A model generated the notes under the pieces. That model saw only the letters and a list, made by a program, of their open reading frames with translations. It ran no database searches and was not told where the DNA came from. This document shows, piece by piece, positions 12,746 to 28,299 of a stretch of 64,000 nucleotides of DNA. A program made the position numbers and the translations under genes. Positions within the stretch are counted from its first letter, which is position 1. Each line of letters begins with the position of its first letter. This DNA is from Thecamonas trahens ATCC 50062 (taxonomy: Eukaryota > Protista > Apusomonadida): assembly GCF_000142905.1 (NCBI RefSeq), contig NW_013657675.1:310001-374000 (forward strand). Reading direction: 5' to 3'.

Positions 12746-13047
12746 NNNNNNNNNNNNNNNNNNNNNNNNNNNNNNNNNNNNNNNNNNNNNNNNNNNNNNN
12801 NNNNNNNNNNNNNNNNNNNNNNNNNNNNNNNNNNNNNNNNNNNNNNNNNNNNNNNNNNNNNNNNNNNNNNNNNNNNNNNNNNNNNNNNNNNNNNNNNNNN
12901 NNNNNNNNNNNNNNNNNNNNNNNNNNNNNNNNNNNNNNNNNNNNNNNNNNNNNNNNNNNNNNNNNNNNNNNNNNNNNNNNNNNNNNNNNNNNNNNNNNNN
13001 NNNNNNNNNNNNNNNNNNNNNNNNNNNNNNNNNNNNNNNNNNNNNNN
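12746..13047. other. Assembly gap (302 N)
   Basis: Run of n characters flanked by G/C homopolymer tracts. Confidence 1.
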
Positions 13048-15748: not shown

Positions 15749-17655
15749 TCATTCATTGGAGTGTAACACACTCCCACCGATCAACGGTGCCTCCATCCGC
15801 GATAGTGCCGCATACTTCCGCCCGCGGACTCGTTCCCACAAACGCAACAAGCCAAAGTCTGTGCCTGAGAGTACCGCGTGGAGGAGAAGAGCGTAGAGCA
15901 CAATCCAAACCGCGATGAGGCCGAGGAGGAGGCTGACACCGGCACCGACCGACGAGATAAAGTATGTGTCGCCCGACCTGAACACTGTCCGCAGCACGTC
16001 CTGCCCCGCCACCCGGCAAGCGGCGTAGTCCGGGATGACTTGCGCGAGCACCGTTGGGCACTCGAACGCCATGTCGGGGAACGTGATGAGCATCAGCGCC
16101 TGGATGGCAGGCCGATAGAACGACGAGAAGAACATCGGCCGGAGAACGGCAGGCGCCCGCGACGGGTTGATGATCGCGCCCGAGGTGAGCATAAAGAACC
16201 CGTAGAGTGTCACACCTACCGAGATCGCAATGACTGGGTCCGGCGAGACCAGGCCCATCACCAGCATGAACAGCTCGGCAAAGATGTTGGCCACCACCAG
16301 AACCGCCAGACCGGCAAAGAACCGGCCCACGCTCCCCCCGGCACCGCCATCATGGCATACAGCACCGCGTAGAACACGCCCACAATGATCAAAATGACAG
16401 CGCTCCGAAAAATAAGCGTGGTAGACACGTGTGCTGCTACAGAGTACAGCCGCGATCGGTACTCGTGCCGGAGAATGAGCCGGTCGTGGACCGCGTGTGG
16501 GAGAGTCGTCAGCGAGACAAAGGTGGTGACAAGGACGGCAAAGAAGAAGACATTGACCAGGTCCCGGACCGTCTCGTAGTCGGACGCAATTTCAAAGTAC
16601 AGCCCGCCAATCATGAGCGCCATCAACCAGATCATGACCGCGCGGACGGAAAACACGTGCGGATCGCGCTTGACCACCAGCGCCTGTCGCCAGAACAGCA
16701 CTTTCATCTTGCTCAGCGATCTCGCTCCAAACACGGGCTCGTCATCGCCGTACGACGTCGTCAGTCGCCGCTTCCCACTGCTGGTCACCAGCACCCGCCC
16801 CGTCGCCGCCCGCCGCCGCGTTCCGCTCCCTCCTCCCACCTCTTCCTCGCCCGACCCCGCCACCGCCACATCAAGCAAATCGCACCCGCCTGGTGAGACT
16901 ACCACCCGCAGCACTTCTTCCGCAACATTGGCGCCTGCAGGCGCAAGCCCGCCAGACACCAGCGCCTCTTGTAGCCGTGATCGTGGCCCCATGTACGCCA
17001 TCCGCCCGCCCACAAGCACCAGCAGCGAGTCCAGCAGACCCACAATCGCCCGCGACGGCTGGTGGATCGAGCACATGACCACAACGCCGTCGCGCGCCGC
17101 AAGCCCCGCCACATCCGCCATCAGTCGCTCTGCGCTCGCAGAGTCCAGCCCGGACGTCGGCTCGTCGAGCAGCAGGTACTTGGGCCGTGACAGCAGCTCG
17201 CACGCCACAGACACCCGCCGCCGCTCGCCGCCGGAAATGCCCCGCTCAAACGCAGACCCGATTCGCGAATCGGCGACATGCTCCAGCCCCAGATCCGCAA
17301 GCACCGCGTCCACAGCCTCGCTTAATACCGCCCCGACCGGCAACCGCAGCGCTCCCTGCGTCTCCAGCGTCTCGCGGACCGTAAGGCACGGAATCAGTGC
17401 TGCATCGTCCTGCGGGCAAAAAGCAAGACGAGACGCAACGTGCTTTGAGTAAGCCATCCCGCCGTACTGTACCCTCGCATCAAGCCGAGCCCCGCTCACC
17501 CCAGGCAGCCGCTCGCCTACCACCGTCAGGAACGTCGACTTGCCTGCCCCAGACGGCCCCATCACCCCCAGCACGGACCCAGGCGCCACCTCGCCAGCCA
17601 CAGACTGCAGAATACTCCGTCCATTCACCTCGTACGACGCAATTTCAAACTGCAT
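15749..17655 (-). CDS. ABCG (White-type) half transporter, NBD-TMD; 1-bp frameshift at C6 16334-16339
   Basis: Walker A GPSGAGKST, signature ISGGERRRV, Walker B LLLDEPTSGLD, SIHQP. ABC2 membrane domain is split between ORFs 16258..17655 and 15749..16330. Confidence 0.92.
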
Positions 17656-17851: not shown

Positions 17852-17930
17852 GGTTCGGTGCCATGTGCAGGTCAGCGTCTTTTCCTCACCCCTACCGTCT
17901 CACACATCTCTCTCGCTACTGCTTGACATT

Positions 17931-20900
17931 ATGCCGCGCTTGGCTGTTGTCGGTGCTGCCTGTAACTATCCTGGCTCGCAGAGTCTGAAAGAATTGTGGG
18001 AAAATGTGTTGGCATCGCGTCGTCAGTTTCGTGACGTGCCTGACGAGCGCCTTCCTCTGGGCGATTACGGTGCTCCCGAGGGTGGCAATGGCGAAGGCGA
18101 GTTCAACGAGTACGATCCGGACTGGAAGGACAAGACTACCGCAAAGTATGCCGCCGTCCTCGATGGTGTCTCGGTCAATGCTCGCGAGTGGCGGGCGAAC
18201 AAGGCCAAGGTCGCATCGACCGACGTTGTCCACTGGCTCGCGCTGCAGGTTGCCGCTTCCGCCCTCGACTCGGTTGATCTCCCTGCAAAGCTCAACGAGG
18301 GCTTTGGCGTCATTGTCGGCAACACCCTGACCGGCGAGACCTCGCGGGCGTCACTCATGCGCCTTAGATGGCCCTTTGTGGAGCGCGAGCTCCGCGAGAC
18401 CGCGGCCGGCCAAGGTCTCGCCCCCGAAGCCATCGACGCACTCGTTTCCGGGCTTAAGACCCGCTACAAGGCTGCGTTTGCCGAGACCACCGAGGATACC
18501 CTTGCCGGCGCTCTTTCCAACACCATTGCCGGCCATGTCTCCAAGCACTACGGCCTGCAAGGCTGCGCATACACAGTCGATGGCGCGTGCGCCTCGTCTG
18601 CGCTCGCTGTCGCCGTCGCTGCAGACCAGCTTGCTGCCGGAAATCTCGACGTTGCCCTCGTCGGCGGCGTCGACATCTCGCTGGATCCGCTCGAGCTCGT
18701 CGGCTTCTCACGCGCAGGCGCGCTATCGTCCACAGACATGAACGTCTATGGCGCTGCCGCAGACGGCTTCTTCCCTGGCGAGGGCTGCGGCTTTGTGGTC
18801 ATCATGCGCGCAGACGATGCTACTGATCTGGGACTCCCCATCCTTTCCTTCCTCGACGGATGGGGCATCTCAGCCGACGGCTACGAGGGCATCATGCGTC
18901 CGTTCCTTGATGGCCAGGCTCTCGCCATCTCGCGCGCTTACGCTCGAGCAAGCTTTGATCCGCGTGACACCCACTTTGTCGAGGGCCACGGGACCGGTAC
19001 CCCAACCGGCGACCCCATCGAGCTCGGCGCCATCCACAAGGTCTTAGCTGCGGCCACGGCCGATGCCGGCGAGCCGGCTGTCGAGCCAGCCTGCATTGGC
19101 GTGACCTCAATCAAATCCATCATTGGTCACACCAAGGCTGCGTCGGGCATTGCTGCATTCCTCAAGGCCGTCCTCGGCGTCAACCAGCGGGTCATCCCAC
19201 CTATGGCCGGCATCCAGCTCGACTCGGTTGCGCCAGCTCTCGCCAAGCTCCCCGGCGTGTATCCAGTCATCCACGGCCGCGCGCTTGCTCTTGACACCGA
19301 CATGCATGCCGCGTCATCGTCGATGGGCTTTGGCGGCATCAACGTCCACCTCATCGTCTCATCCACCGCTGCCTCGCCGCCGCTTCAGCTACTCGGCGGT
19401 CCCGATCACCTCGCCCGTGAGCGCTATCTTGCCTCGGCCCAGGATGCTGAACTCCTTGTCTTTAACGCGCCCTCGCTCACTGGCCTCCTTGCCGAACTCA
19501 CCGAAGCCGCTGACATCCTCTCGCGCGCCTCCTGGGCCGAGGTCGCCGACTACGCCGCCCATCTTGCCGCGGCGGCGGCCGCATCTGATGCCGACCTCTG
19601 TGCAGCCACTGTCGCTGCCGTTGTCACCTCGCTCGCCCATGCCCAGAGCCTCGTTGCAGACGCCATCGCTGCTGCCTCAGACGCCTTGGCTCTCGCTCCG
19701 GTCGTGCTGCCCGAGAGCCTCTATGCCTCGTTTGCGCCGTCGTGGAAGGCTGCCGACCCCGAGCTCGTCTGGGTCTGCGCTGGCCAGGGCACGCAGCGGG
19801 CGGGCATGGCCCTCCAGCTCTGCCGCCGCTTCTCTGCTACTCATCGCGCAGAGCTGCTCGGCATTGATCCCAACTCAGAGCTGGCTGCTGAGGTCGAGGC
19901 AGTTGTCACTGCCGCGCTCGACGTTCATCTCCCTGTACTTGCCGCCCCGCATCCTCAGCTCTTGGCCACGCTCAAAGACGACGCCCAGCGCGTTCTCGCT
20001 GTGACTGAAGCCCTGTGGATTGGCCTACTTCGCCGCTGCGGCGTGCCGTGCGGCGCCGTCGCCGGCCACTCACTAGGTGACGTCATCGCGCTATACGCTG
20101 CCGGCGTCTTTGATTTTGCCACTTTGTGGCAAGTGGTCGACGCGCGCGCGCGCGCGTTTGCTAGCGCGCCGAGTGGTGGAATGGCGGTCATGCGCGGATC
20201 AGCTGACGCTGCTGCCGCACTTCTGGCAAGCGTTCCCACCGGCAACCAGCTGGTCGTCGCCAACATCAACGCGCCCGACCGCATCGTCCTTGCGGGGCCA
20301 CCAGACGCCATCGCCACCGCTGTGGCCGCCGGGGCCGACGCAGGGCTCCCGGGCGCGGTCCTTGCCTCGGTCTCTGCCCCGTTCCACACCCCAAGCATGG
20401 CCGACGTCGCCGCATCATTTGAGGCTGCGCTGCTCGCCATCCTCGAGGAGACCACGCTTGCCAAACCCAGCGTGCCGGTCTACTCCTCGTGCCGCGGTGG
20501 CGAGCTTGAGCTCTCCGCCATGGCGTCCCCGGCCGCCCTCGCCACATACCTTGCTCAGTGCGTGGCGTCACCGGTCGACTACGTCGGTGTTGTCGCCGCC
20601 GCCACCGCTGCTGGCCACAAGCTCGGTATCGAGATCGGGTCGTACACCCACGACATGACCCGAATGACCCGTCGCTGTGGCGACGCCCTGAAGCTGCTCC
20701 CGGTTGAGGCTCGCCCGGGTTGCTTTGGTGCTTTCCTTGACCTGGTCGCCCGCTCCGTGGCGGCGGCGCCGGCGACGCTTGCCCTCCATCCGCTCTTTGA
20801 CCACCGCTTTGTGCGCGAGTGGGTCGACCCGCGGTCAAGGACGTTCATCGTCAACCCATGTGAGTCGCCGATCTACGGCCCGCCACTGCAAGACGCCACC

Positions 20901-23900
20901 AAGCTCCGCTCGCGAGTTGCTACCGTCTCAGCCTCTATCCGCGACAGAGGCGCAAGTGCTGCCAACGACCGCGGCTCGGATGTCCGTGCTGCCGCGCGTC
21001 GCGCCGCAGCCCGCCGTAAGGACCACAAAGCCGCACGATCCAAGACAAACTCCGGCAAGCCGAGGTCCAAGGCTGCGGTGGCGTTTGAGACCGCCGTCGT
21101 GCCTTCGCTCGCCACGGCGGGTGATGCCGCAACCAACGAGGCGCTTGCAAAGTACCTTGCGGTCCGTGGCAAGTACCTTGCCTCGCTCATCGAAGCTGAC
21201 ATGCGCAAGGGCGGCGTCCAGGCCGCCATCGAGGCCGCCGACGCCGCCGCCGAGGCCAAGCGTCAGCAACGCATCCGCGCCATGTCTGTGGCAGCCACCG
21301 CTGCCGTCCTCACTGCCGAGCCGAGCATGACTGCTGCCCTCGTCCTGGAGGTTGTTGTGGATCTGGCCTCCGAGGCTGCGTCCTTTGCCGCCGCGCCCAC
21401 CACCCAGCTGCTCGAGCTCTACCTCGATTCAATCAAGTCGGTCCGGTTCATCACCGACATTGCGGTTGCCCTCGGCCTCGACGCCTCGCTTGTCAACCCG
21501 ACGTCGCCCGATTGGCAGAAACCGATGACGCTTGCCTCGCTCGCCAAGCGCATGCATATCCTCTGTGAGTCAAGCGGTGGCGCTGGCCAGCGCGCTGGCC
21601 CGGCGTCAGGCGGCCTTGCATCGGGCGCAAGCCAATCGGTTTGGTCTTGGCTCGGCATCTTTGACGAAATGCCGCTCCCGCTCTTTCCCAACCCCGATCC
21701 AATCGCCTCGATCGAGTCCGCCACGCTTGTTGTTCATGTTGGCGACGACTCGGCTGCCGCCGCCCACAACGTGGCCAGTGGCTTGGGTCTTGCCGAGCCC
21801 ACTATCGTTATTGACCTCGCCGCCGATGCAGCCGCTGCGGCTGCGGCTGCTGCGGCTGCGTCCTATCTCATTGTCGTAGCCCCACAGATACCGGACCCCG
21901 CAACTTCTGCTGGTGCTGCGGTGACGGCAACTGCGACGGTGATGGCGACGCTCGGTCGCCTCGTCCGTGCTGTTGGCGATGTGTGGAGGATGGAGGACCG
22001 CTGCGGTGGCCGGATCAATGATGGCGGCATTATCTATGTGCTGCATGGTGACGGGCCTGTCCCACTCCGCGGCTTTGCCGCCTCGGCTCTCCTTGAGGCG
22101 GGCTCGTACGTCCCAGCAGCCGTTGTGACCTGCGAGCCGAGCCTGTCGCCAGCTGATGCCGGGCGGTTCACTGCCGCTCTACTAACTCGCTGCCCGCTCG
22201 AGCCCAAGTTTGTCATCGCCACCACGTCCGGCCCAGCTCCGGCCGACGGCAAGTCCTGGATCGCCTTCCGTCATCCGCGACCATACTCCTTCGACTCTTC
22301 GCCACTCCTCCTCGATGCCCCGGCTCTGGCGTCGTCGGCTGTGGCTGTTGCGCCAGTATCGGAGGCAGCTGCCGTTGTCTCGTGGTGTGACGCGCTCGCC
22401 CGCGGCGGCGATGCTCCGCGGTCGACTTTGGGTGCCGTCGTTGTCTCGGGTGGTGGTAAGGGCATCACGGCCGAGTGCATCTTCCGTGCTGCGGCCTACC
22501 TCTCGCTCACCAGGCTCGTTCTTGTTGGCACCTCGCCGGCCTCGCATCCTCAGGTCACCGCTACGCTCGAGCGGATGGCGCGAGTGCCTGGCCTGCAGGC
22601 GCGGTACTACGTCGCAGATGTGACGGACCGCCCATCAGTCGACGCCATGCTTGAGGCGCTGAGTGCCGACGAGCCGTCATGGGAGGTGGTCGGCCTTGTC
22701 CACGGTGCCGCGACCAACAAGCCAGCTGCCACCGACGAGCTGGGATCGGGGGACGCCGCCGCGCGCGACATGCAGGTCAAGGTCTGCGGCGCCGCGGTCC
22801 TCCTCGACGCGCTGCACACCTCACCGCGCGCTCGCGGCGAGCCCGGGCTGGAATTTATAGTCGGCCTCTCGTCGATCATTGCCGCCACTGGCATGTTTTC
22901 GGCAGGCGTCTACGGCAGCGCCAATCTGCTGATGGAGCGCGTCTTTGGCTCGGTCGCCAGCTCGGTTCCAGTCGTCCTCATCCGCTACGGCGTATGGGAA
23001 GAGGTTGGCATGGGCGCCCGCATGGGCTCGGTCGAGTTTATGGAGGCATCAGGCATGACGCCGCTGAGCGTCGAAGCCGGCTCGCGCGCCTTTGTCGAGC
23101 TACTCGCCGAAGCGCTTGTTGCTGACAATCTAGCTGCACCGATCGTTGCTGTTGTTGCCTCGCGCCTTGGCGGACTGGCCACCTGGTGCAACGGATGGAA
23201 CTGCTCCCATCCGCGGGTCCGCAACGCCGCGGGTGCTTCGATTCTCAGCAACGCACCGGCCTTTGACTCGGTCGCCGCGCTGGAGCCCAACCTCGAGCTG
23301 ACGCTTGTCCGCAAAATGAGCATCCAAAATGCCCGCTACCTAGCCGACCACTCGATCGGCGGCTCTGTGGTGGTGCCAGCTGCGGTCGAGCTGGCGCTCT
23401 GTGTTCAGGCCGCCGCGGGGCTTCACGCCCCACTCCATCCGCCGGCCAGCACCAAGCCGAGCTGGAAAGATGTGAGCGCGGGCTCAATTGTCTGCCGCGA
23501 CTTTGCCTTTCCTCTCGCGCTCGACGTCCATCGACGCCGCGGTGCCGTCGTGGCTGTCACCGCCGCCAACTGGACAGCAGCGCCCAGGCTGGATGGCCAG
23601 GCACATCCGTGGTCCGTCGTATGGGTGCAAAACGAGTTTGGCAAGCTAACCGCCACCGGATGCGTTGGTATCGTGACCACTGACACCCTTGCTGACGGCG
23701 CCTTTGCGCGGTGCGCCGCGCCGCTCAAGCTCCTTGCTGACGCCCGCAGCTCAAGCCCGACGTACATCGATGTCAAGGCCGACATCTATGAGCCCGGCCT
23801 TCTCTTCCACACTAGCGTCTTTCGGCGCATTAGCGCTATCCGTGCCCTCATGTGGGACGAGGCGGCTGGGCGCGGCCACGTCATTGCCCGGGTCTCGCGC

Positions 23901-26105
23901 ACGCCCGGCGGCGTTGACGACGTCATGGCCACCCGCGAGTCACTCGGCGGTCTAGGGGATCCGCTCTTCCGTGACGGTGTCATCCAGTGCGCGCTGGCGA
24001 TCATCCCGCAAGAGGTCTCGCTGCCGTCATCGCTTTCAGCACTGTATGTCCACCAAGCCGCGAGCTTCGCGCTGGCTGATGCTGACGTCCTCGATGTGGT
24101 ACTCACGCTCACCCGCGAATACAACGGCGTCTACGCCGCCAACGTCGTTGTCCACGGCATTCATTCGGTCAGTGGCGCCTCGATGGTGGCCGAAGAGTGG
24201 TACGGCCTGAGATACAAGGTTGTTCGCCACGATCCGACGCGCCCGGCGGCAGCCGACCTTCTCGCGCCCAGCGCTCGTGACAACACCGTGCTGAACAAGA
24301 CTATGAGCGAAGCAGCCTTTGCCTTTGGTATAGAGCTTCCCAAGCTCGCGGTCTGCGCCGCTGAGCTCCCGTTTCAGGCCGTCGGCAGGCCTGCCGGAGT
24401 GCAGGCTATGATCAAGACGGCGCGGCGCAAGGCCCAGGCTGAGATGGTGACAGATCTCGTTGGCAGTCATGCCAAGCTCGGCCACAGCCCTACCGGCGCG
24501 CCACACCTGGTATTGCGGTCGCCAGGAAGCTCGAAAGCCGAGACTGGGCTCTCGTTTTCGTACACTGAGCGAGTGCTGGCGGCGGCGTGTGACGATGGCA
24601 GCGCTGGATTTGGCTCCGCCGTCGGCATCGACGTGGTGGCGCTCCGCGACGACGCGTCGCGCGTCACCGCCGCCATGCTCCCACACAAGAGCCATCGCAA
24701 GGTGGTGGTCTGGCTCACCTCGGGCGGATATGGCAAGGTGAGTGTAGATAGCGCCCACGTGGCGCGGGCGCGAATCTGGGCAGCGCTCGAGGCGGCGTTC
24801 AAAGCCCGTGGGCCGCTTGCTGATGCAAGCCGCGGATGGAGTGATGCAAGCGTTGGTGTCCTCCGCCGCCGCGGCGATGCAGTCCTGCTCTGGGTTGAGG
24901 GCCCGAACGGCGCCGGACGCGAAGGCAAGCACCTTGTTCTCACTCTCCCGCTACAGCTGACCCGATCGGGTAAGATTATGACTGCTGTGACCGCGCGCGA
25001 AGCCGGCCTGGACACGCTCGGGCTGGTAGTGCCCGGGCCGCAGCTGGGGTGGAACCTCGGCATTGCGCTCTCGCCCGAGCCCAGCAACTCGTCAGACATC
25101 GCGTTCACCATACGGCACCGCATGGCGGTCTCATTCCACGACACCGGCTCCGCAAGCGCCACGTTCCTCTTTGCGCGATTGTACGACGTCATCGGGCGGA
25201 CGCGCGAGCTGTCGATGCGGTACTCGCCCGAGGCTCTCTCCGAGGCTACCAGGTTTTCCGAGGGCGAGGTGGCGTCGGTGAGTGACTGGGTCCATGTCGT
25301 GCGCGTTCGCGAGATCGAGGTCAAGGACGTACTCCAGGTCGAGTTCCGAGCGGTGAGCGTGACCGAGGCGTCCGCCGTTTTCTCAATCCGCATGCTTGCC
25401 GGGCGCAGCGGGACCGAGTTTGTACCGGTTGCCTACGCCACGCTCGGTATCTCAGCAGTGCGTGTTGAAGGCCGCGAGGCTGCGCGGACGCCATGGACCG
25501 CGGCGTTTATGCGGTTCTTGTGCGCCATGGCGCCAAGAGTCTCGTACGCAGAAGCATCGCAGGCGGTGTTCCGATCGGTGCTTGATGGCTCAGTCCTCGC
25601 GTCGCCGTCGTGGCACGGCGGCGTGGCGTGCCAGGCCGACTGGGGCGTCGACGATGCCGAGTGGGCCGAGGCCAGGGCGGCGCCGGCGACCGATCTTGGC
25701 GGGCAGATTTGGGCCTCGTCCGAACGCGGTGGTGCAGTTGTCCACGTCTGGCAGCACACAACGGATCGGATGGCCAGTAACTTTGTGGGCAACGTGTACT
25801 TTGCCGAGTACGGAGCGTGGATGGGCGCGGCGTGGGAGTCGCTCATCCACGACGTCGATGCCGCCGCCGAGGCCGCCGGCAGCCTCCGCGTCCACGAATC
25901 CAACATTGTGTACGAGGTCGAGTCGTTCCCGTTCGACTCGCTGTCGTGCGAGGTTGGCATCGCCGCTGTTCATGACACCGGCGTGGTCGTCGACTTTGTC
26001 TTTCGCCGCCCGGGCGTGGTTCTTGCCCGCGGCCGGCAGGTGTACTGCGGCGAGATGGGGCCAGGCCTGCACAACGTGCTCGATCGGGTGATGGCTTCAG
26101 TTTAG
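17931..26105 (+). CDS. pksE: Enediyne-type iterative type I polyketide synthase (KS-AT-ACP-KR-DH-PPTase) with two fused hot-dog thioesterase domains
   Basis: KS: DGACASS (Cys 18588), EGHGTGT, GHTKAASG. AT: AGQGTQ, GHSLG (20070), APFH. ACP: LYLDSIK (21429). KR: SGGGKGITAEC, YGSAN. DH: YLADHSIGGSVVVP, GDPLFRD. PPTase: VGIDVV, RIWAALEAAFKA. TE: IGRTRE and SNFVGNVYFAEY. PKSE-diagnostic KS strings STDVVHWLAL and VGNTLTGETSRASLMRLRWPFV. Confidence 0.92.
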   Translation: MPRLAVVGAACNYPGSQSLKELWENVLASRRQFRDVPDERLPLGDYGAPEGGNGEGEFNEYDPDWKDKTTAKYAAVLDGVSVNAREWRANKAKVASTDVVHWLALQVAASALDSVDLPAKLNEGFGVIVGNTLTGETSRASLMRLRWPFVERELRETAAGQGLAPEAIDALVSGLKTRYKAAFAETTEDTLAGALSNTIAGHVSKHYGLQGCAYTVDGACASSALAVAVAADQLAAGNLDVALVGGVDISLDPLELVGFSRAGALSSTDMNVYGAAADGFFPGEGCGFVVIMRADDATDLGLPILSFLDGWGISADGYEGIMRPFLDGQALAISRAYARASFDPRDTHFVEGHGTGTPTGDPIELGAIHKVLAAATADAGEPAVEPACIGVTSIKSIIGHTKAASGIAAFLKAVLGVNQRVIPPMAGIQLDSVAPALAKLPGVYPVIHGRALALDTDMHAASSSMGFGGINVHLIVSSTAASPPLQLLGGPDHLARERYLASAQDAELLVFNAPSLTGLLAELTEAADILSRASWAEVADYAAHLAAAAAASDADLCAATVAAVVTSLAHAQSLVADAIAAASDALALAPVVLPESLYASFAPSWKAADPELVWVCAGQGTQRAGMALQLCRRFSATHRAELLGIDPNSELAAEVEAVVTAALDVHLPVLAAPHPQLLATLKDDAQRVLAVTEALWIGLLRRCGVPCGAVAGHSLGDVIALYAAGVFDFATLWQVVDARARAFASAPSGGMAVMRGSADAAAALLASVPTGNQLVVANINAPDRIVLAGPPDAIATAVAAGADAGLPGAVLASVSAPFHTPSMADVAASFEAALLAILEETTLAKPSVPVYSSCRGGELELSAMASPAALATYLAQCVASPVDYVGVVAAATAAGHKLGIEIGSYTHDMTRMTRRCGDALKLLPVEARPGCFGAFLDLVARSVAAAPATLALHPLFDHRFVREWVDPRSRTFIVNPCESPIYGPPLQDATKLRSRVATVSASIRDRGASAANDRGSDVRAAARRAAARRKDHKAARSKTNSGKPRSKAAVAFETAVVPSLATAGDAATNEALAKYLAVRGKYLASLIEADMRKGGVQAAIEAADAAAEAKRQQRIRAMSVAATAAVLTAEPSMTAALVLEVVVDLASEAASFAAAPTTQLLELYLDSIKSVRFITDIAVALGLDASLVNPTSPDWQKPMTLASLAKRMHILCESSGGAGQRAGPASGGLASGASQSVWSWLGIFDEMPLPLFPNPDPIASIESATLVVHVGDDSAAAAHNVASGLGLAEPTIVIDLAADAAAAAAAAAAASYLIVVAPQIPDPATSAGAAVTATATVMATLGRLVRAVGDVWRMEDRCGGRINDGGIIYVLHGDGPVPLRGFAASALLEAGSYVPAAVVTCEPSLSPADAGRFTAALLTRCPLEPKFVIATTSGPAPADGKSWIAFRHPRPYSFDSSPLLLDAPALASSAVAVAPVSEAAAVVSWCDALARGGDAPRSTLGAVVVSGGGKGITAECIFRAAAYLSLTRLVLVGTSPASHPQVTATLERMARVPGLQARYYVADVTDRPSVDAMLEALSADEPSWEVVGLVHGAATNKPAATDELGSGDAAARDMQVKVCGAAVLLDALHTSPRARGEPGLEFIVGLSSIIAATGMFSAGVYGSANLLMERVFGSVASSVPVVLIRYGVWEEVGMGARMGSVEFMEASGMTPLSVEAGSRAFVELLAEALVADNLAAPIVAVVASRLGGLATWCNGWNCSHPRVRNAAGASILSNAPAFDSVAALEPNLELTLVRKMSIQNARYLADHSIGGSVVVPAAVELALCVQAAAGLHAPLHPPASTKPSWKDVSAGSIVCRDFAFPLALDVHRRRGAVVAVTAANWTAAPRLDGQAHPWSVVWVQNEFGKLTATGCVGIVTTDTLADGAFARCAAPLKLLADARSSSPTYIDVKADIYEPGLLFHTSVFRRISAIRALMWDEAAGRGHVIARVSRTPGGVDDVMATRESLGGLGDPLFRDGVIQCALAIIPQEVSLPSSLSALYVHQAASFALADADVLDVVLTLTREYNGVYAANVVVHGIHSVSGASMVAEEWYGLRYKVVRHDPTRPAAADLLAPSARDNTVLNKTMSEAAFAFGIELPKLAVCAAELPFQAVGRPAGVQAMIKTARRKAQAEMVTDLVGSHAKLGHSPTGAPHLVLRSPGSSKAETGLSFSYTERVLAAACDDGSAGFGSAVGIDVVALRDDASRVTAAMLPHKSHRKVVVWLTSGGYGKVSVDSAHVARARIWAALEAAFKARGPLADASRGWSDASVGVLRRRGDAVLLWVEGPNGAGREGKHLVLTLPLQLTRSGKIMTAVTAREAGLDTLGLVVPGPQLGWNLGIALSPEPSNSSDIAFTIRHRMAVSFHDTGSASATFLFARLYDVIGRTRELSMRYSPEALSEATRFSEGEVASVSDWVHVVRVREIEVKDVLQVEFRAVSVTEASAVFSIRMLAGRSGTEFVPVAYATLGISAVRVEGREAARTPWTAAFMRFLCAMAPRVSYAEASQAVFRSVLDGSVLASPSWHGGVACQADWGVDDAEWAEARAAPATDLGGQIWASSERGGAVVHVWQHTTDRMASNFVGNVYFAEYGAWMGAAWESLIHDVDAAAEAAGSLRVHESNIVYEVESFPFDSLSCEVGIAAVHDTGVVVDFVFRRPGVVLARGRQVYCGEMGPGLHNVLDRVMASV

Positions 26106-26119
26106 CGGCATAGAGCAGA

Positions 26120-28165
26120 TCAAAGGCGCACGCCGCCGGAAATGATGTCGGCGTGGAGCTTGGGTGTGAGTGGGACAAAGGTGTTGCCTGAGAGGAAGTA
26201 AATGTCGGGGACATATTCGGGGTCAATGCCTTCGTCGCGGAGCTGGACCTTCTTGTGCTTGTACGTGCCGGTGAGATCCATGGCCGGGAGAAAGCGGAGG
26301 AAGAGCGGAACGGCATATGAGGCGAGGTGCGTGCGGATGTGAGCGGCAAAGCCGGTAAAGTCAAAGGCATCAGGCGAGGCGCCGACAATGGCCACCAGGC
26401 CAGCTCGGCCGGAGTACTCGCCGACGGTCACGCCGTAGACGTTGCACTCGAGCGGGGCCGGATCGGTGAAGCGGGCGCATACCTCAGCAACCTCCGAAGT
26501 GGCCACGTTCTCGCCCTTCCAGCGGAACGTGTCGCCGATGCGGTCAACAAAGTAGACAAAACCTTCGTCGTCGCGCTTGAGCAGGTCGCCTGAGCGGAAC
26601 CAGGCATCGCCTTGCTTGAACACATCCTTGAGCACCTTTTTCGACGATGCCGTCGATGAAGTGTAGCCCGAGTAGTTGGTCGCGCCCGACTTGAACTTGA
26701 TGATCTTGGCGATAAACTCGCCAGCCTCGTCGGTCTCGACCGCGATGCACCTGCCGTCGGGTCCGCGAACCACCTCTTCGGTCATGCGGTCAAATTTGAC
26801 GATTTGCTGCGGGAGAATGGCCTGCAGCGGTTGCGAGATGTATCCGATTGAGTTGTCCTTGTCCTCCAGGTTGAGAATGGCGGCCGCGCCCTCAGTGGCG
26901 GCGTAGAACTCGAGGATGCGGTCTACGCCGAACCGGGTCTTGAACTTGGACCACACGTCTGGCCGGAGACCGTTGCCGATGGCCAGGCGGACCGAGTTGT
27001 CGGCGTCACGAGGGTGCGCCGGCGCCGCGAGTAGGTAGCGGCAGAGTTCGCCGATGTACTGCACAATGGTGACGTCGTACTTGACCACGTCGGCTGTGTA
27101 CCGTGAAGCCGAGAACTTGGACCGGAGAACCATCATGGCACCGCCATACAACACCATACCCACGCCAATCATACCGGCGGCAGAGTGGTAGAGCGGGAGG
27201 ACGGTGTAGACTCGGTCGTCGGGCGTGACCTTGGCAAAGATCGAGAACGCCGACGCCGCAGTCAGGTAGCGGAAGTGGGTCACGATGGCGGCCTTGGGCA
27301 GGCCGGTCGTGCCCGAGGTGTAGATATAGAGCAGTGGGTCACGCGTCTTGACTCCACGAGCGTACCCACGGCTCTCAGCTGGCACCGGCTTGATCGAGAG
27401 GCTTGACCAGCCGATGGCAGACGCGCCGTCGACCCGCGCGAGCTCGTCGGCCGCATCGTCGTCAAGGCAGGCGAGCAGAACGTCCGAGTGCAGGCCACGG
27501 AGCTCGTCGCGGACAGCGGCGACAACGTTGGCAAGTGCAGCATCAAACAGTACGGCCTGCGCGCCCGAGACCGCGATCGAGTGCATCAGCACATCGCCAG
27601 TCTGGTTGGTGTTGACCAGCGCGGCACGGACGCCGACCTTGGCCAGGCCTAGCCAGACGGCAATGTACCGCGGGCGGTTGTAGCCAAACACCGCGACAAT
27701 GGTGCCAGGCTCGAGGCCGGCGTCTAGCGCCCAGTGCGCCACCTGGTTGGCGGCGTCGTCCATCTGGCCAAAGGTAAAGTACTCGCCAGAGTCAACATGG
27801 GCAAAGGCCGGGGCGCCACGGCCGCGCCAAGCCACGGTCGACTCCCAGAGCTGATCCACAGTTGTGTTCTTCCGGTCCGCGTTCTTGAGATACAGCTGGA
27901 TGCGGACTCCACCGACGAGCATCCGTACATCGCGCATTCTCAGACCCTTTTTGGAGACAAGGAAAGCAAGGCCAGCAGCAGCGACGCCAGCCAGGACCAG
28001 CAGGACCAGCCACAGAGCACACACCAGCCACCAGAGCACAGGCCCCAGCACAAGGCCAACAACAAGTCCCGAAACTCCCGGCGAGTGGCGGACCAAGCTC
28101 CTCATGCCCTCCTTCACTCGTCCCACCATGCTCGTTGCGCTCGCTCGGCTCGTTGTTCCTGACAT
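26120..28165 (-). CDS. Fatty acid transport protein / very-long-chain acyl-CoA synthetase (SLC27/FATP family)
   Basis: N-terminal TM; YIYTSGTTGLPKAA; QYIGELCRYL; GNGLRPDVW; EFYAATEG; FVDRIGDTFRWKGENV. Confidence 0.95.
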   Translation of the reverse strand: MSGTTSRASATSMVGRVKEGMRSLVRHSPGVSGLVVGLVLGPVLWWLVCALWLVLLVLAGVAAAGLAFLVSKKGLRMRDVRMLVGGVRIQLYLKNADRKNTTVDQLWESTVAWRGRGAPAFAHVDSGEYFTFGQMDDAANQVAHWALDAGLEPGTIVAVFGYNRPRYIAVWLGLAKVGVRAALVNTNQTGDVLMHSIAVSGAQAVLFDAALANVVAAVRDELRGLHSDVLLACLDDDAADELARVDGASAIGWSSLSIKPVPAESRGYARGVKTRDPLLYIYTSGTTGLPKAAIVTHFRYLTAASAFSIFAKVTPDDRVYTVLPLYHSAAGMIGVGMVLYGGAMMVLRSKFSASRYTADVVKYDVTIVQYIGELCRYLLAAPAHPRDADNSVRLAIGNGLRPDVWSKFKTRFGVDRILEFYAATEGAAAILNLEDKDNSIGYISQPLQAILPQQIVKFDRMTEEVVRGPDGRCIAVETDEAGEFIAKIIKFKSGATNYSGYTSSTASSKKVLKDVFKQGDAWFRSGDLLKRDDEGFVYFVDRIGDTFRWKGENVATSEVAEVCARFTDPAPLECNVYGVTVGEYSGRAGLVAIVGASPDAFDFTGFAAHIRTHLASYAVPLFLRFLPAMDLTGTYKHKKVQLRDEGIDPEYVPDIYFLSGNTFVPLTPKLHADIISGGVRL

Positions 28166-28299
28166 GCGTTTTTTTAGGGGAGACGTGTGGGCAGACTTTG
28201 GGCTGCAGGTCCAGCTACCAAAGCGCACGACCAATGCAGCTCGGTGTCGGCTTTGCCCAGAGTCACTTCCGATGGCTGTTGTGACGGCGGGAGGTCTTA

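What the first reader, a model, noticed from the sequence alone, without database searches (positions are those of the whole stretch)
25100..26100. Two enediyne-type thioesterases fused to the PKS, with the conserved motif apparently split between them
Seen: after the PPTase come two ~130-aa hot-dog-like units. Unit 1 (RHRMAVSFHDTGSASATFLFARLYDVIGRTRE) keeps the GRxRE arginine motif but has lost NxxGNVY. Unit 2 (HTTDRMASNFVGNVYFAEYGAWMGAAWE) keeps NxVGNVYF but has lost the arginines. Established: SgcE10/DynE7/CalE7 are stand-alone oligomeric hot-dog thioesterases with consensus like ETNLVGNVYYxNYxRWQGRCRE and substrate channels at subunit interfaces. Inference: the tandem pair forms an intramolecular pseudo-dimer with one composite active site. 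That would make this a one-gene, self-priming (PPTase) and self-releasing (TE) polyene assembly line, well suited to surviving transfer into a eukaryote without operons.
Basis: partly seen in the sequence, partly recalled or inferred. Interest (0 to 1): 0.8.

Follow-up and report, generated by a model that had tools for sequence, protein, structure and literature searches.

The report
Fused double hot-dog thioesterase on PKS
A giant polyketide synthase gene in a protist chromosome ends in two copies of the enediyne-type release enzyme that seem to share one active site; hundreds of bacteria carry the same uncharacterised design, so it was not invented in the eukaryote.

Summary
One intron-free ORF (17931-26105, +, 2724 aa) encodes KS, AT, ACP, KR, DH and an Sfp-type PPTase. 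It ends in two hot-dog units: unit 1 at about 25059-25532 and unit 2 at about 25704-26099.

Unit 2 matches CalE7, DynE7 and SgcE10 directly. Unit 1 matches nothing as a single sequence. A family profile of unit 1 hits only the enediyne thioesterases in the PDB (DynE7, E 6.5e-13), and it aligns to the unit 2 profile at 99.6% probability.

An AlphaFold2 model (pTM 0.85) is a double hot-dog. It superposes on acyl-ACP thioesterases with Z 24.

The split motif holds across the family. In 56 tandem relatives the unit 1 Arg is present in 55 of 55, and the unit 2 Asn/Asn/Tyr/Tyr in 54-56 of 56. The unit 2 Arg survives in only 28 of 56. That fits one composite site made of unit 1 Arg and unit 2 Asn/Tyr, with a decaying reciprocal site.

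The fusion is not a eukaryotic invention. 358 bacterial stretches match, and the best 80 span both units, mostly at the C-terminus of PKSs of about 2500-2700 aa. Two other eukaryotic contigs carry relatives, and each has an ABCG gene next to the PKS.

The scan's earlier notes concern this window only.

The parts
17931..26105 (+). Single ORF of 2724 aa: an iterative type I PKS with the order KS-AT-ACP-KR-DH-PPTase-TE'-TE
   Evidence: There are no stops in 2746 codons. GC is 65.5% against 63-64% in the flanks. The flanking genes are eukaryotic.
17937..19211 (+). Ketosynthase domain
   Evidence: Pfam ketoacyl-synt (3e-39) and Ketoacyl-synt_C (3e-26). The best NCBIfam matches include PfaA-type KS-MAT.
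19767..20639 (+). Acyltransferase domain
   Evidence: Pfam Acyl_transf_1, 1.2e-21. It is closest to FabD/DisD-type malonyl transferases; the DynE8 AT scores only 30.8 bits.
21420..21440 (+). Probable ACP phosphopantetheine site (L-D-S motif, Ser 1167)
   Evidence: Motif read from the translation. Relative P0004 has a weak PP-binding hit at the equivalent place. This assignment is inferred.
22437..22475 (+). Glycine-rich loop that I read as the Rossmann motif of the ketoreductase
   Evidence: Motif read from the sequence. The relatives P0003, P0004 and P0016 have Pfam KR hits. Pfam does not call the window's own KR.
23298..23423 (+). Dehydratase N-terminal part, with a His-x3-Gly-x4-Pro stretch that I read as the DH motif
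   Evidence: Pfam PKS_DH_N, 1.3e-4. The motif lies at 23349-23378.
24198..25007 (+). Sfp-type phosphopantetheinyl transferase domain
   Evidence: Pfam ACPS is weak. The family profile A3 hits Sfp (1qr0) at 2e-7. The Asp of G-x-D (24621-24644) and the Glu and Lys of W-x3-E-x3-K (24771-24806) are invariant in 21 sequences.
25059..25532 (+). Unit 1: a degenerate enediyne-type hot-dog thioesterase copy. It keeps Gly2422, Arg2425 and Glu2426, but has Ser, Thr, Leu and Leu at the Asn19, Asn23, Tyr25 and Tyr29 positions.
   Evidence: Profile hit to DynE7, SgcE10 and CalE7. hhalign against unit 2. AlphaFold2 gives the strand-helix-four-strand pattern at pLDDT 86-94. Arg is present in 55 of 55 relatives.
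25194..25208 (+). Unit 1 motif G-R-T-R-E. The second Arg (Arg2425) aligns with CalE7 Arg37.
25533..25703 (+). Linker between the two hot-dog units. It is partly disordered in the model and ends in a helix.
   Evidence: AlphaFold2 gives pLDDT below 50 for residues 184-211 of the 365-aa query and a helix at 217-230.
25704..26099 (+). Unit 2: an enediyne-type hot-dog thioesterase. It keeps Asn2617, Asn2621, Tyr2623, Tyr2627 and Trp2630, and has Trp2635 in place of the catalytic Arg.
   Evidence: PDB hits to CalE7, DynE7 and SgcE10. Pfam 4HBT_2, 2e-6. AlphaFold2 pLDDT 84-97. Family conservation.
25776..25838 (+). Unit 2 motif, from Ser-Asn-Phe-Val-Gly-Asn-Val-Tyr to Trp-Glu
16258..17655 (-). Divergently transcribed ABCG-type half transporter, a possible partner of the PKS. 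This ORF covers only part of the gene.
   Evidence: Pfam ABC_tran and ABC2_membrane. A transporter of the same type lies next to the PKS on two other eukaryotic contigs. It is 34% identical to the one in L002.

Best explanation
The last 365 residues of this PKS are an intramolecular double hot-dog thioesterase. It arose by tandem duplication of an enediyne-type (CalE7/DynE7/SgcE10-like) hot-dog thioesterase.

The two copies pack like the two subunits of the ancestral homodimer. Of the two interface active sites, only one is kept. In that site, unit 2 supplies the Asn/Asn/Tyr/Tyr cluster at the start of its central helix (Asn2617, Asn2621, Tyr2623, Tyr2627). Unit 1 supplies the Arg-Glu pair on its helix (Arg2425, Glu2426), which is the equivalent of the catalytic Arg37 of CalE7. 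The reciprocal site is dead in this protein: unit 1 has Ser, Thr, Leu and Leu, and unit 2 has Trp2635.

The domain most likely releases the ACP-bound polyene made by the upstream KS-AT-ACP-KR-DH. It may also decarboxylate it, as CalE7 does. The built-in PPTase primes the ACP, so one polypeptide primes itself, builds the chain and releases the product.

What is shown: homology of both units, the predicted double hot-dog fold, the family-wide complementary conservation, and the PPTase motifs. What is inferred: that the residues converge on one pocket, the thioesterase chemistry, and the polyene product.
For: Homology of the two units:
- Unit 2 hits CalE7 (4.4e-5), DynE7 and SgcE10.
- The unit 1 family profile hits only those enediyne thioesterases in the PDB, led by DynE7 at 6.5e-13.
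- The unit 1 and unit 2 profiles align at 99.6%, E 1e-24, over 129 columns.

Fold:
- The AlphaFold2 model has mean pLDDT 83 and pTM 0.85.
- VIA-align gives Z 24.4, rmsd 2.6 A and 250 aligned residues against 2own, covering model residues 26-351. FatA, FatB, ACOT7, ACOT12 and LnmK follow, all double hot-dogs.

Conservation in 56 tandem relatives:
- Unit 1 has Gly 55/55, Arg 55/55 and Glu 54/55.
- Unit 2 has Asn 55/56, Asn 56/56, Tyr 56/56 and Tyr 54/56.
- The unit 2 Arg is present in only 28/56. Fisher p is 8e-11.

Cross-unit co-variation:
- Relatives whose unit 1 still has at least three of the four Asn/Tyr positions keep the unit 2 Arg in 11 of 13 cases. The others keep it in 16 of 41 (p 0.009).
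- All six relatives with a fully degenerate unit 1 lack the unit 2 Arg.
- P0040 keeps both motifs in both units, which looks like an early stage after duplication.

Other points:
- Class I hot-dog thioesterases build each site from two monomers. In SaDHNA, Asp16 and His23 come from one monomer and a helix residue 15 positions further on (Glu31) comes from the other (PMC8918352).
- The window protein keeps nearly all family-invariant residues of the retained site.
- The PPTase profile hits Sfp at 2e-7 and its motif residues are invariant.
- Six bacterial loci show no conserved neighbours, which fits a self-sufficient gene.
Against: - No coordinates were available, so the distance between Arg2425 and Asn2617/Tyr2627 was not measured.
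- I could not read the CalE7, DynE7 or SgcE10 structure papers. That Arg37 acts across the subunit interface in those enzymes is therefore my inference from fold class, not a cited fact.
- The unit 1 Arg-Glu pair could be conserved for structural reasons or for ACP docking.
- The co-variation test is not corrected for relatedness, and several rows are close kin.
- The AlphaFold2 alignment was shallow (43 rows).
- No activity or product is known for any member of this family.
Confidence: 0.75

Rival explanations
1. Only unit 2 matters catalytically, or the thioesterase is inactive in this protist because the catalytic Arg is lost. Unit 1 would then be a structural scaffold or an ACP-docking or lid domain, and its conserved Arg-Glu would have a non-catalytic role.
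For: - Unit 1 has lost every Asn/Tyr residue of the motif.
- In plant FatB-type double hot-dogs the N-terminal unit mainly shapes the acyl pocket. This is my own knowledge of that family and was not tested here.
- The three eukaryotic proteins sit on long branches.
Against: - The unit 1 Arg is present in 55 of 55 relatives, while the homologous Arg in unit 2 is lost in half. A purely structural role would not predict that asymmetry.
- It would also not predict the co-variation between the unit 1 Asn/Tyr positions and the unit 2 Arg.
- The window protein keeps the invariant core of both units, and the 8.2-kb ORF is intact.
Confidence: 0.15
2. The didomain is not a hydrolase. It would be another double hot-dog activity, such as an LnmK-like acyltransferase/decarboxylase or a dehydratase or isomerase, acting on the ACP-bound chain.
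For: LnmK (Z about 20) and the FAS dehydratase regions (Z about 17) are among the structural matches.
Against: - By sequence, both units match only the enediyne thioesterases in the PDB and Pfam 4HBT_2.
- The conserved residues are the CalE7 catalytic set.
- The synthase already has a DH domain.
Confidence: 0.07
3. Unit 1 is not a hot-dog domain at all, and its G-R-x-R-E is a chance match.
For: As a single sequence, unit 1 has no PDB hit, no Pfam hit and no BLAST hit to unit 2.
Against: The profile hits, hhalign at 99.6%, the AlphaFold2 fold and the structural Z of 24 over both units.
Confidence: 0.01

Closest known systems
CalE7 / DynE7 / SgcE10, the enediyne polyene-ACP thioesterases (hot-dog fold; PDB 2w3x, 2xem/2xfl, 4i4j)
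   Same: Both units are homologous to them, and to no other PDB family by sequence. The Asn19, Tyr29 and Arg37 residue set is present in the didomain as a whole. Like them, it is paired with a KS-AT-ACP-KR-DH-PPTase synthase.
   Different: The known enzymes are stand-alone proteins of about 140-160 aa that work as oligomers, and every chain carries the whole motif. Here two copies are fused in one chain at the end of the synthase. The motif is divided between them, and only one of the two interface sites is kept. No enediyne cassette is nearby.
Double hot-dog acyl-ACP and acyl-CoA thioesterases (plant FatA/FatB, bacterial 2own/2ess/4gak, ACOT7/ACOT12)
   Same: They have the same predicted architecture: two hot-dog units in one chain packed as a pseudo-dimer. 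Z is 22-24 and rmsd 2.6-3.5 A over about 250 residues.
   Different: No sequence relationship was detected. Pfam Acyl-ACP_TE was not matched by any of 21 members, and identity in the structural alignments is 9-12%. The catalytic residues differ, so this looks like an independent duplication of a different single-domain ancestor.
Enediyne polyketide synthases (PKSE: SgcE, CalE8, DynE8)
   Same: They share the domain order KS-AT-ACP-KR-DH-PPTase, including the unusual built-in Sfp-type PPTase. JGI names two relatives 'enediyne polyketide synthase'.
   Different: PKSEs use a separate thioesterase and sit in enediyne cassettes. This family has the thioesterase fused and duplicated, has no conserved neighbours in bacteria, and has an AT no closer to DynE8 than to FabD-type transferases.

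Membership tests
Enediyne-type hot-dog thioesterase (CalE7/DynE7/SgcE10; Pfam 4HBT_2) | Significant sequence similarity to the solved members | tested here: met
   Unit 2 as a single sequence: CalE7 4.4e-5, DynE7 2.8e-4, SgcE10 1.6e-3. Unit 1 as a family profile: DynE7 6.5e-13, SgcE10 1.1e-11, CalE7 2.1e-8.
Enediyne-type hot-dog thioesterase (CalE7/DynE7/SgcE10; Pfam 4HBT_2) | Hot-dog fold: a long central helix wrapped by an antiparallel sheet | tested here: met
   The AlphaFold2 model shows a strand, a long helix and four strands in each unit, with pLDDT mostly 86-97. It matches hot-dog proteins structurally. This is a prediction, not an experiment.
Enediyne-type hot-dog thioesterase (CalE7/DynE7/SgcE10; Pfam 4HBT_2) | Asn19, Tyr29 and catalytic Arg37 all present in each chain | tested here: not met
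   Unit 1 has Ser and Leu at the Asn19 and Tyr29 positions but keeps Arg. Unit 2 keeps Asn and Tyr but has Trp at the Arg position. The full set exists only across the two units.
Enediyne-type hot-dog thioesterase (CalE7/DynE7/SgcE10; Pfam 4HBT_2) | Stand-alone protein acting as a homo-oligomer | tested here: not met
   Both units lie in one 2724-aa ORF after the PPTase. The same holds in 43 bacterial ORFs of 2300-2800 aa.
Enediyne-type hot-dog thioesterase (CalE7/DynE7/SgcE10; Pfam 4HBT_2) | Hydrolyses, and decarboxylates, the ACP-bound polyene of its synthase | not testable with these tools
   This needs expression and product analysis.
Double hot-dog thioesterases (FatA/FatB type, Pfam Acyl-ACP_TE) | Two hot-dog units in one chain packed as a pseudo-dimer | tested here: met
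   pTM 0.85. Z 24.4, rmsd 2.6 A and 250 of 256 residues of 2own aligned across model residues 26-351.
Double hot-dog thioesterases (FatA/FatB type, Pfam Acyl-ACP_TE) | Sequence membership in the Acyl-ACP_TE family | tested here: not met
   None of the 21 didomain members matches it at E 0.01. Only 4HBT_2 is found, and only on unit 2.
Enediyne polyketide synthase (PKSE) | Domain order KS-AT-ACP-KR-DH with a C-terminal Sfp-type PPTase | tested here: met
   Pfam hits for KS, AT, DH and ACPS. KR is called in the relatives. The PPTase profile hits Sfp at 2e-7 and its Asp, Glu and Lys are invariant. ACP and KR in the window protein are assigned from motifs only.
Enediyne polyketide synthase (PKSE) | Domains specifically closest to bona fide PKSE domains | tested here: inconclusive
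   The only solved PKSE catalytic domain, the DynE8 AT, scores 30.8 bits. A FabD-type transferase scores 81.9 bits. No full-length PKSE sequence was available for a tree.
Enediyne polyketide synthase (PKSE) | Sits in an enediyne cassette (E3, E4, E5 and a separate E10 thioesterase) | tested here: not met
   The window neighbours are an ABCG transporter, an AMP-binding enzyme, a MAP10-like protein and a papain-type protease. The neighbours I scanned at five of the six bacterial loci I looked at are unrelated housekeeping or sensor genes. The cassette proteins themselves were not searched for in the whole genome.

The most novel reading that the evidence does not exclude
This is a eukaryotic member of a large, so far uncharacterised family of autonomous one-polypeptide polyene synthases with the order KS-AT-ACP-KR-DH-PPTase-TE'-TE. 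Release depends on an asymmetric double hot-dog with a single composite site, derived from the enediyne thioesterase.

In a small eukaryotic clade the synthase is inherited together with an ABCG half transporter. Together they would form a two-gene unit that makes and exports, or flips, an unknown conjugated polyene lipid or hydrocarbon.
Probability: 0.45. Interest if true: 0.7.

Novelty: new variant of a known kind. Interest (0 to 1): 0.6.

Why it matters
Enediyne-type synthases are known only as part of multi-gene cassettes with a separate, oligomeric thioesterase.

Here the same chemistry appears packed into one gene. It is found in matching stretches of 358 genome contigs, in a collection with one genome per bacterial species, and in at least three eukaryotic contigs. 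I found no described product and no paper on this family in the searchable literature.

The complementary decay of the two thioesterase copies gives a clear, testable picture of how a homo-oligomeric hot-dog enzyme turns into an asymmetric single-chain enzyme. It also points to which residue pairs act together in CalE7-type catalysis.

A self-priming, self-releasing synthase should be easy to express in a foreign host, so the family's product could be found quickly. The conserved ABCG neighbour in eukaryotes suggests a small gene cluster that has stayed together without an operon.

Tried and rejected
Sequence searches:
- BLASTP of unit 1 against unit 2 found nothing. Homology appears only at profile level.
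- phmmer of the unit 1 region against the PDB found nothing.
- The word-based search for full-length relatives that share the C-terminus found only the protein itself. The exhaustive representative search was needed to find relatives.

Papers:
- I could not read the CalE7, DynE7 or SgcE10 structure papers. The cross-subunit position of Arg37 is therefore inferred.
- Literature searches for fused or double hot-dog thioesterases on PKSE-like synthases, and for PKSE homologues in the bacterial groups found here, gave nothing relevant.

Ideas rejected or left unresolved:
- That the fusion is a eukaryotic adaptation is rejected. Bacteria have the same architecture.
- That a specific bacterial donor can be named is not resolved. 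The three eukaryotic proteins group together on long branches outside all 50 sampled bacterial proteins. The tree was built with FastTree, rooted at the midpoint and carries a long-branch warning.
- That the neighbouring acyl-CoA synthetase-like gene belongs with the PKS is not supported. It is absent from the two other eukaryotic loci.

Not possible or not used:
- No model coordinates are exposed, so no distances between residues could be measured.
- Complex prediction was not used. The single-chain model already gave a confident arrangement of the two units.


Full report
THE GENE

The finding lies at the 3' end of one uninterrupted ORF, 17865-26105 on the + strand, with the first Met at 17931 (2724 aa).
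- Pfam finds KS, AT, the N-terminal part of a PKS dehydratase, a weak ACPS (PPTase) hit, and a 4HBT_2 thioesterase hit at the very end.
- GC content is 65.5%, against 63-64% in the flanks.
- The flanking genes are eukaryotic: a MAP10-like protein, NCA2 and a papain-type protease.
- The genome is 28.7 Mb in 131 contigs and has a single copy of this C-terminal region.
- The gene therefore sits in a eukaryotic chromosome. I could not name the organism.

CHECK OF THE OBSERVATION

Unit 2 (about 25704-26099) matches the three solved enediyne thioesterases directly: CalE7 2w3x at E 4.4e-5, DynE7, and SgcE10 4i4j. From that alignment, and in CalE7 numbering, unit 2 keeps Asn19, Asn23, Tyr25, Tyr29 and Trp32. 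It has Trp where Arg37 should be.

That Arg37 is the key catalytic residue of CalE7, and that Tyr29 assists decarboxylation, is my recollection of Kotaka et al. 2009. I could not open that paper.

Unit 1 (about 25059-25532) gives nothing as a single sequence. It has no PDB hit, no Pfam hit, and no BLAST alignment to unit 2.

RELATIVES

The exhaustive search of 1.84 billion representatives with the last 365 residues returned 59 proteins.
- Almost all contain both units in the same order.
- Only two hits are ordinary single-domain thioesterases of about 140 aa.
- Many hits are synthases of 2200-2900 aa that carry the pair at their C-terminus. The shorter ones are fragments, or PPTase-plus-pair proteins.

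Three lines of evidence show that unit 1 is a diverged copy of the enediyne thioesterase:
- A profile of unit 1 from the window and 23 bacterial loci hits only the enediyne thioesterases in the PDB: DynE7 6.5e-13, SgcE10 1.1e-11, 5vpj, 9ccr and CalE7 2.1e-8. The next hit has E 0.02.
- hhalign of the unit 1 profile against the unit 2 profile gives 99.6% probability, E 1.1e-24, over 129 columns.

Pfam recognises only unit 2 in all 21 members tested.

FOLD

AlphaFold2, given a 43-row alignment, produced a model with mean pLDDT 83 and pTM 0.85.
- Each unit shows one strand, a long helix and four long strands.
- The only poorly predicted parts are the first 13 residues and a linker loop.

Foldseek and VIA-align place the whole model on solved double hot-dog thioesterases.
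- 2own gives Z 24.4, rmsd 2.6 A and 250 of 256 residues aligned, across model residues 26-351.
- FatA, FatB, ACOT7, ACOT12 and LnmK follow.

The two units are therefore predicted to pack as an intramolecular pseudo-dimer in the usual double hot-dog arrangement. There is no detectable sequence relationship to the FatA/FatB family. This looks like an independent duplication of a different ancestor.

THE SPLIT MOTIF IS A FAMILY TRAIT

I aligned the two units of 56 tandem relatives to the unit profiles.
- In unit 1, the Gly and Arg of G-x-x-R-E are present in 55 of 55, and the Glu in 54 of 55. The positions equivalent to Asn19, Asn23, Tyr25 and Tyr29 vary.
- In unit 2, the four Asn/Tyr positions are present in 55, 56, 56 and 54 of 56. 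The Arg37 position is Arg in only 28 of 56, and otherwise Leu, Val, Ile, Trp, Ser, Ala, Phe or Cys.
- The asymmetry is far beyond chance: Fisher p is 8e-11 for Arg and 1e-15 for Asn19.

There is also cross-unit co-variation.
- Relatives whose unit 1 retains three or four of the Asn/Tyr positions keep the unit 2 Arg in 11 of 13 cases. The rest keep it in 16 of 41 (p 0.009, not corrected for relatedness).
- All six relatives with a fully degenerate unit 1, the window protein among them, have lost the unit 2 Arg.
- One relative, P0040, still has the complete motif in both units.

This is the pattern expected if the ancestral homodimer had two interface sites, each using the Asn/Tyr of one chain and the Arg of the other. 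After fusion, only the site made of unit 2 Asn/Tyr and unit 1 Arg stayed under selection.

Independent support for such two-chain sites in this fold class comes from a class I hot-dog thioesterase. There, Asp16 and His23 of one monomer and Glu31 of the neighbouring monomer line one site (PMC8918352). Glu31 is 15 residues downstream of Asp16. Arg37 is 18 residues downstream of Asn19.

I could not measure the distance in the model, because coordinates are not exposed. This last step is therefore inference.

The window protein keeps nearly every invariant residue of the retained site. That argues the site is functional.

SELF-PRIMING

A profile of the 270 residues before unit 1 hits Sfp (1qr0) at 2e-7, as well as the human and bacterial PPTases.
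- The Asp of G-x-D and the Glu and Lys of W-x3-E-x3-K are invariant in 21 sequences. I take these to be the Sfp-type PPTase signature residues.
- They lie at 24621-24644 and 24771-24806 in the window.

An L-D-S serine at 21420-21440 is the likely ACP site. A glycine-rich loop (22437-22475) and a His-x3-Gly-x4-Pro stretch (23349-23378), which I read as the KR Rossmann and DH motifs, are also present. These three assignments rest on motifs and on Pfam hits in relatives.

DISTRIBUTION

A scan of one genome per bacterial species found 358 matching stretches. The best 80 all span both units.
- The organisms include many Desulfosarcina and other Desulfobacterales.
- They also include Thermoactinomycetaceae (Laceyella, Shimazuella, Thermoflavimicrobium), Omnitrophota, Planctomycetota, Bryobacterales, a cyanobacterium, Derxia and Dyella.
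- In 43 loci the pair ends an ORF of 2300-2800 aa. In others the synthase is split into two ORFs.
- The neighbours I scanned at five of the six bacterial loci I looked at are unrelated to one another: release factor 3, OmpA, a chitinase, a cellulase, histidine kinases, FadL and YidC. That fits an autonomous gene.

The one-gene design was therefore already present in bacteria and is not an adaptation to eukaryotes.

Two relatives, P0003 and P0004, lie on eukaryotic contigs, next to genes with myosin, HSF and PARG domains.

In a FastTree of 53 full-length proteins the three eukaryotic proteins group together (support 100) outside all the bacterial ones. They sit on long branches, the program warns about this, and the root is arbitrary. 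No donor lineage can be named.

IS IT AN ENEDIYNE PKS?

The domain order with a built-in PPTase is that of PKSE, and JGI names two relatives that way. Three things argue against calling it more than PKSE-like:
- The AT is closer to FabD and DisD-type transferases (81.9 bits) than to the DynE8 AT (30.8 bits).
- The KS-AT matches PfaA-type models best.
- No enediyne cassette is nearby.

I therefore call it PKSE-like in architecture. A conjugated polyene product is likely, because there is a KR and a DH but no ER. The product is unknown.

VERDICT

It is corrected in two respects. The split motif and the fusion are features of a widespread bacterial family rather than of this gene. The convergence of the retained residues on one pocket is still inferred.

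I found no paper that describes this family.

Noticed in passing
window 16258-17655 (-); L002 6819-9155 (-); the contig of P0004: An ABCG-type half transporter (ABC_tran plus ABC2_membrane) lies directly next to the PKS in all three eukaryotic loci, though in different orientations. The window and L002 transporters are 34% identical, about the same as the PKSs are to each other (33%). This may be a co-inherited two-gene unit.
   Followed up: partly
window 26120-28234 (-): An AMP-binding (acyl-CoA synthetase-like) gene ends 15 bases after the PKS stop codon, convergent with it. The two other eukaryotic loci have no such neighbour, so the proposed three-gene cluster is not supported for this gene.
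   Followed up: partly
protein P0016, residues 976-1087: A PKS of unknown origin (Logan assembly) from the same family carries a GAF domain between AT and ACP. That is the place where the window protein has its long basic and helical insertion. It hints at a regulatory module at that position.
   Followed up: no
protein P0004, residues 2621-2711: A eukaryotic relative has a PH domain after the two thioesterase units. This suggests membrane targeting of the synthase.
   Followed up: no
protein P0040 (312 aa): This tandem thioesterase keeps the complete Asn/Tyr and Arg motif in both units. It looks like an early stage after the duplication, with both sites possibly still active.
   Followed up: partly
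protein P0002 (199 aa, on an 893-base ENA contig): This fragment is 55% identical to the window's linker and unit 2, far closer than any other hit. A related organism with the same gene is probably present in an environmental sample.
   Followed up: no
L034, L032, L077, L003 and others: In several bacterial genomes the synthase is split into two consecutive ORFs, for example 1816 plus 726 aa. The PPTase and both thioesterase units stay on the second ORF. Some of these splits may be assembly frameshifts.
   Followed up: no
window 12746-13047: A run of 302 N, either an assembly gap or a withheld stretch, inside the low-GC block at 12-14 kb.
   Followed up: no
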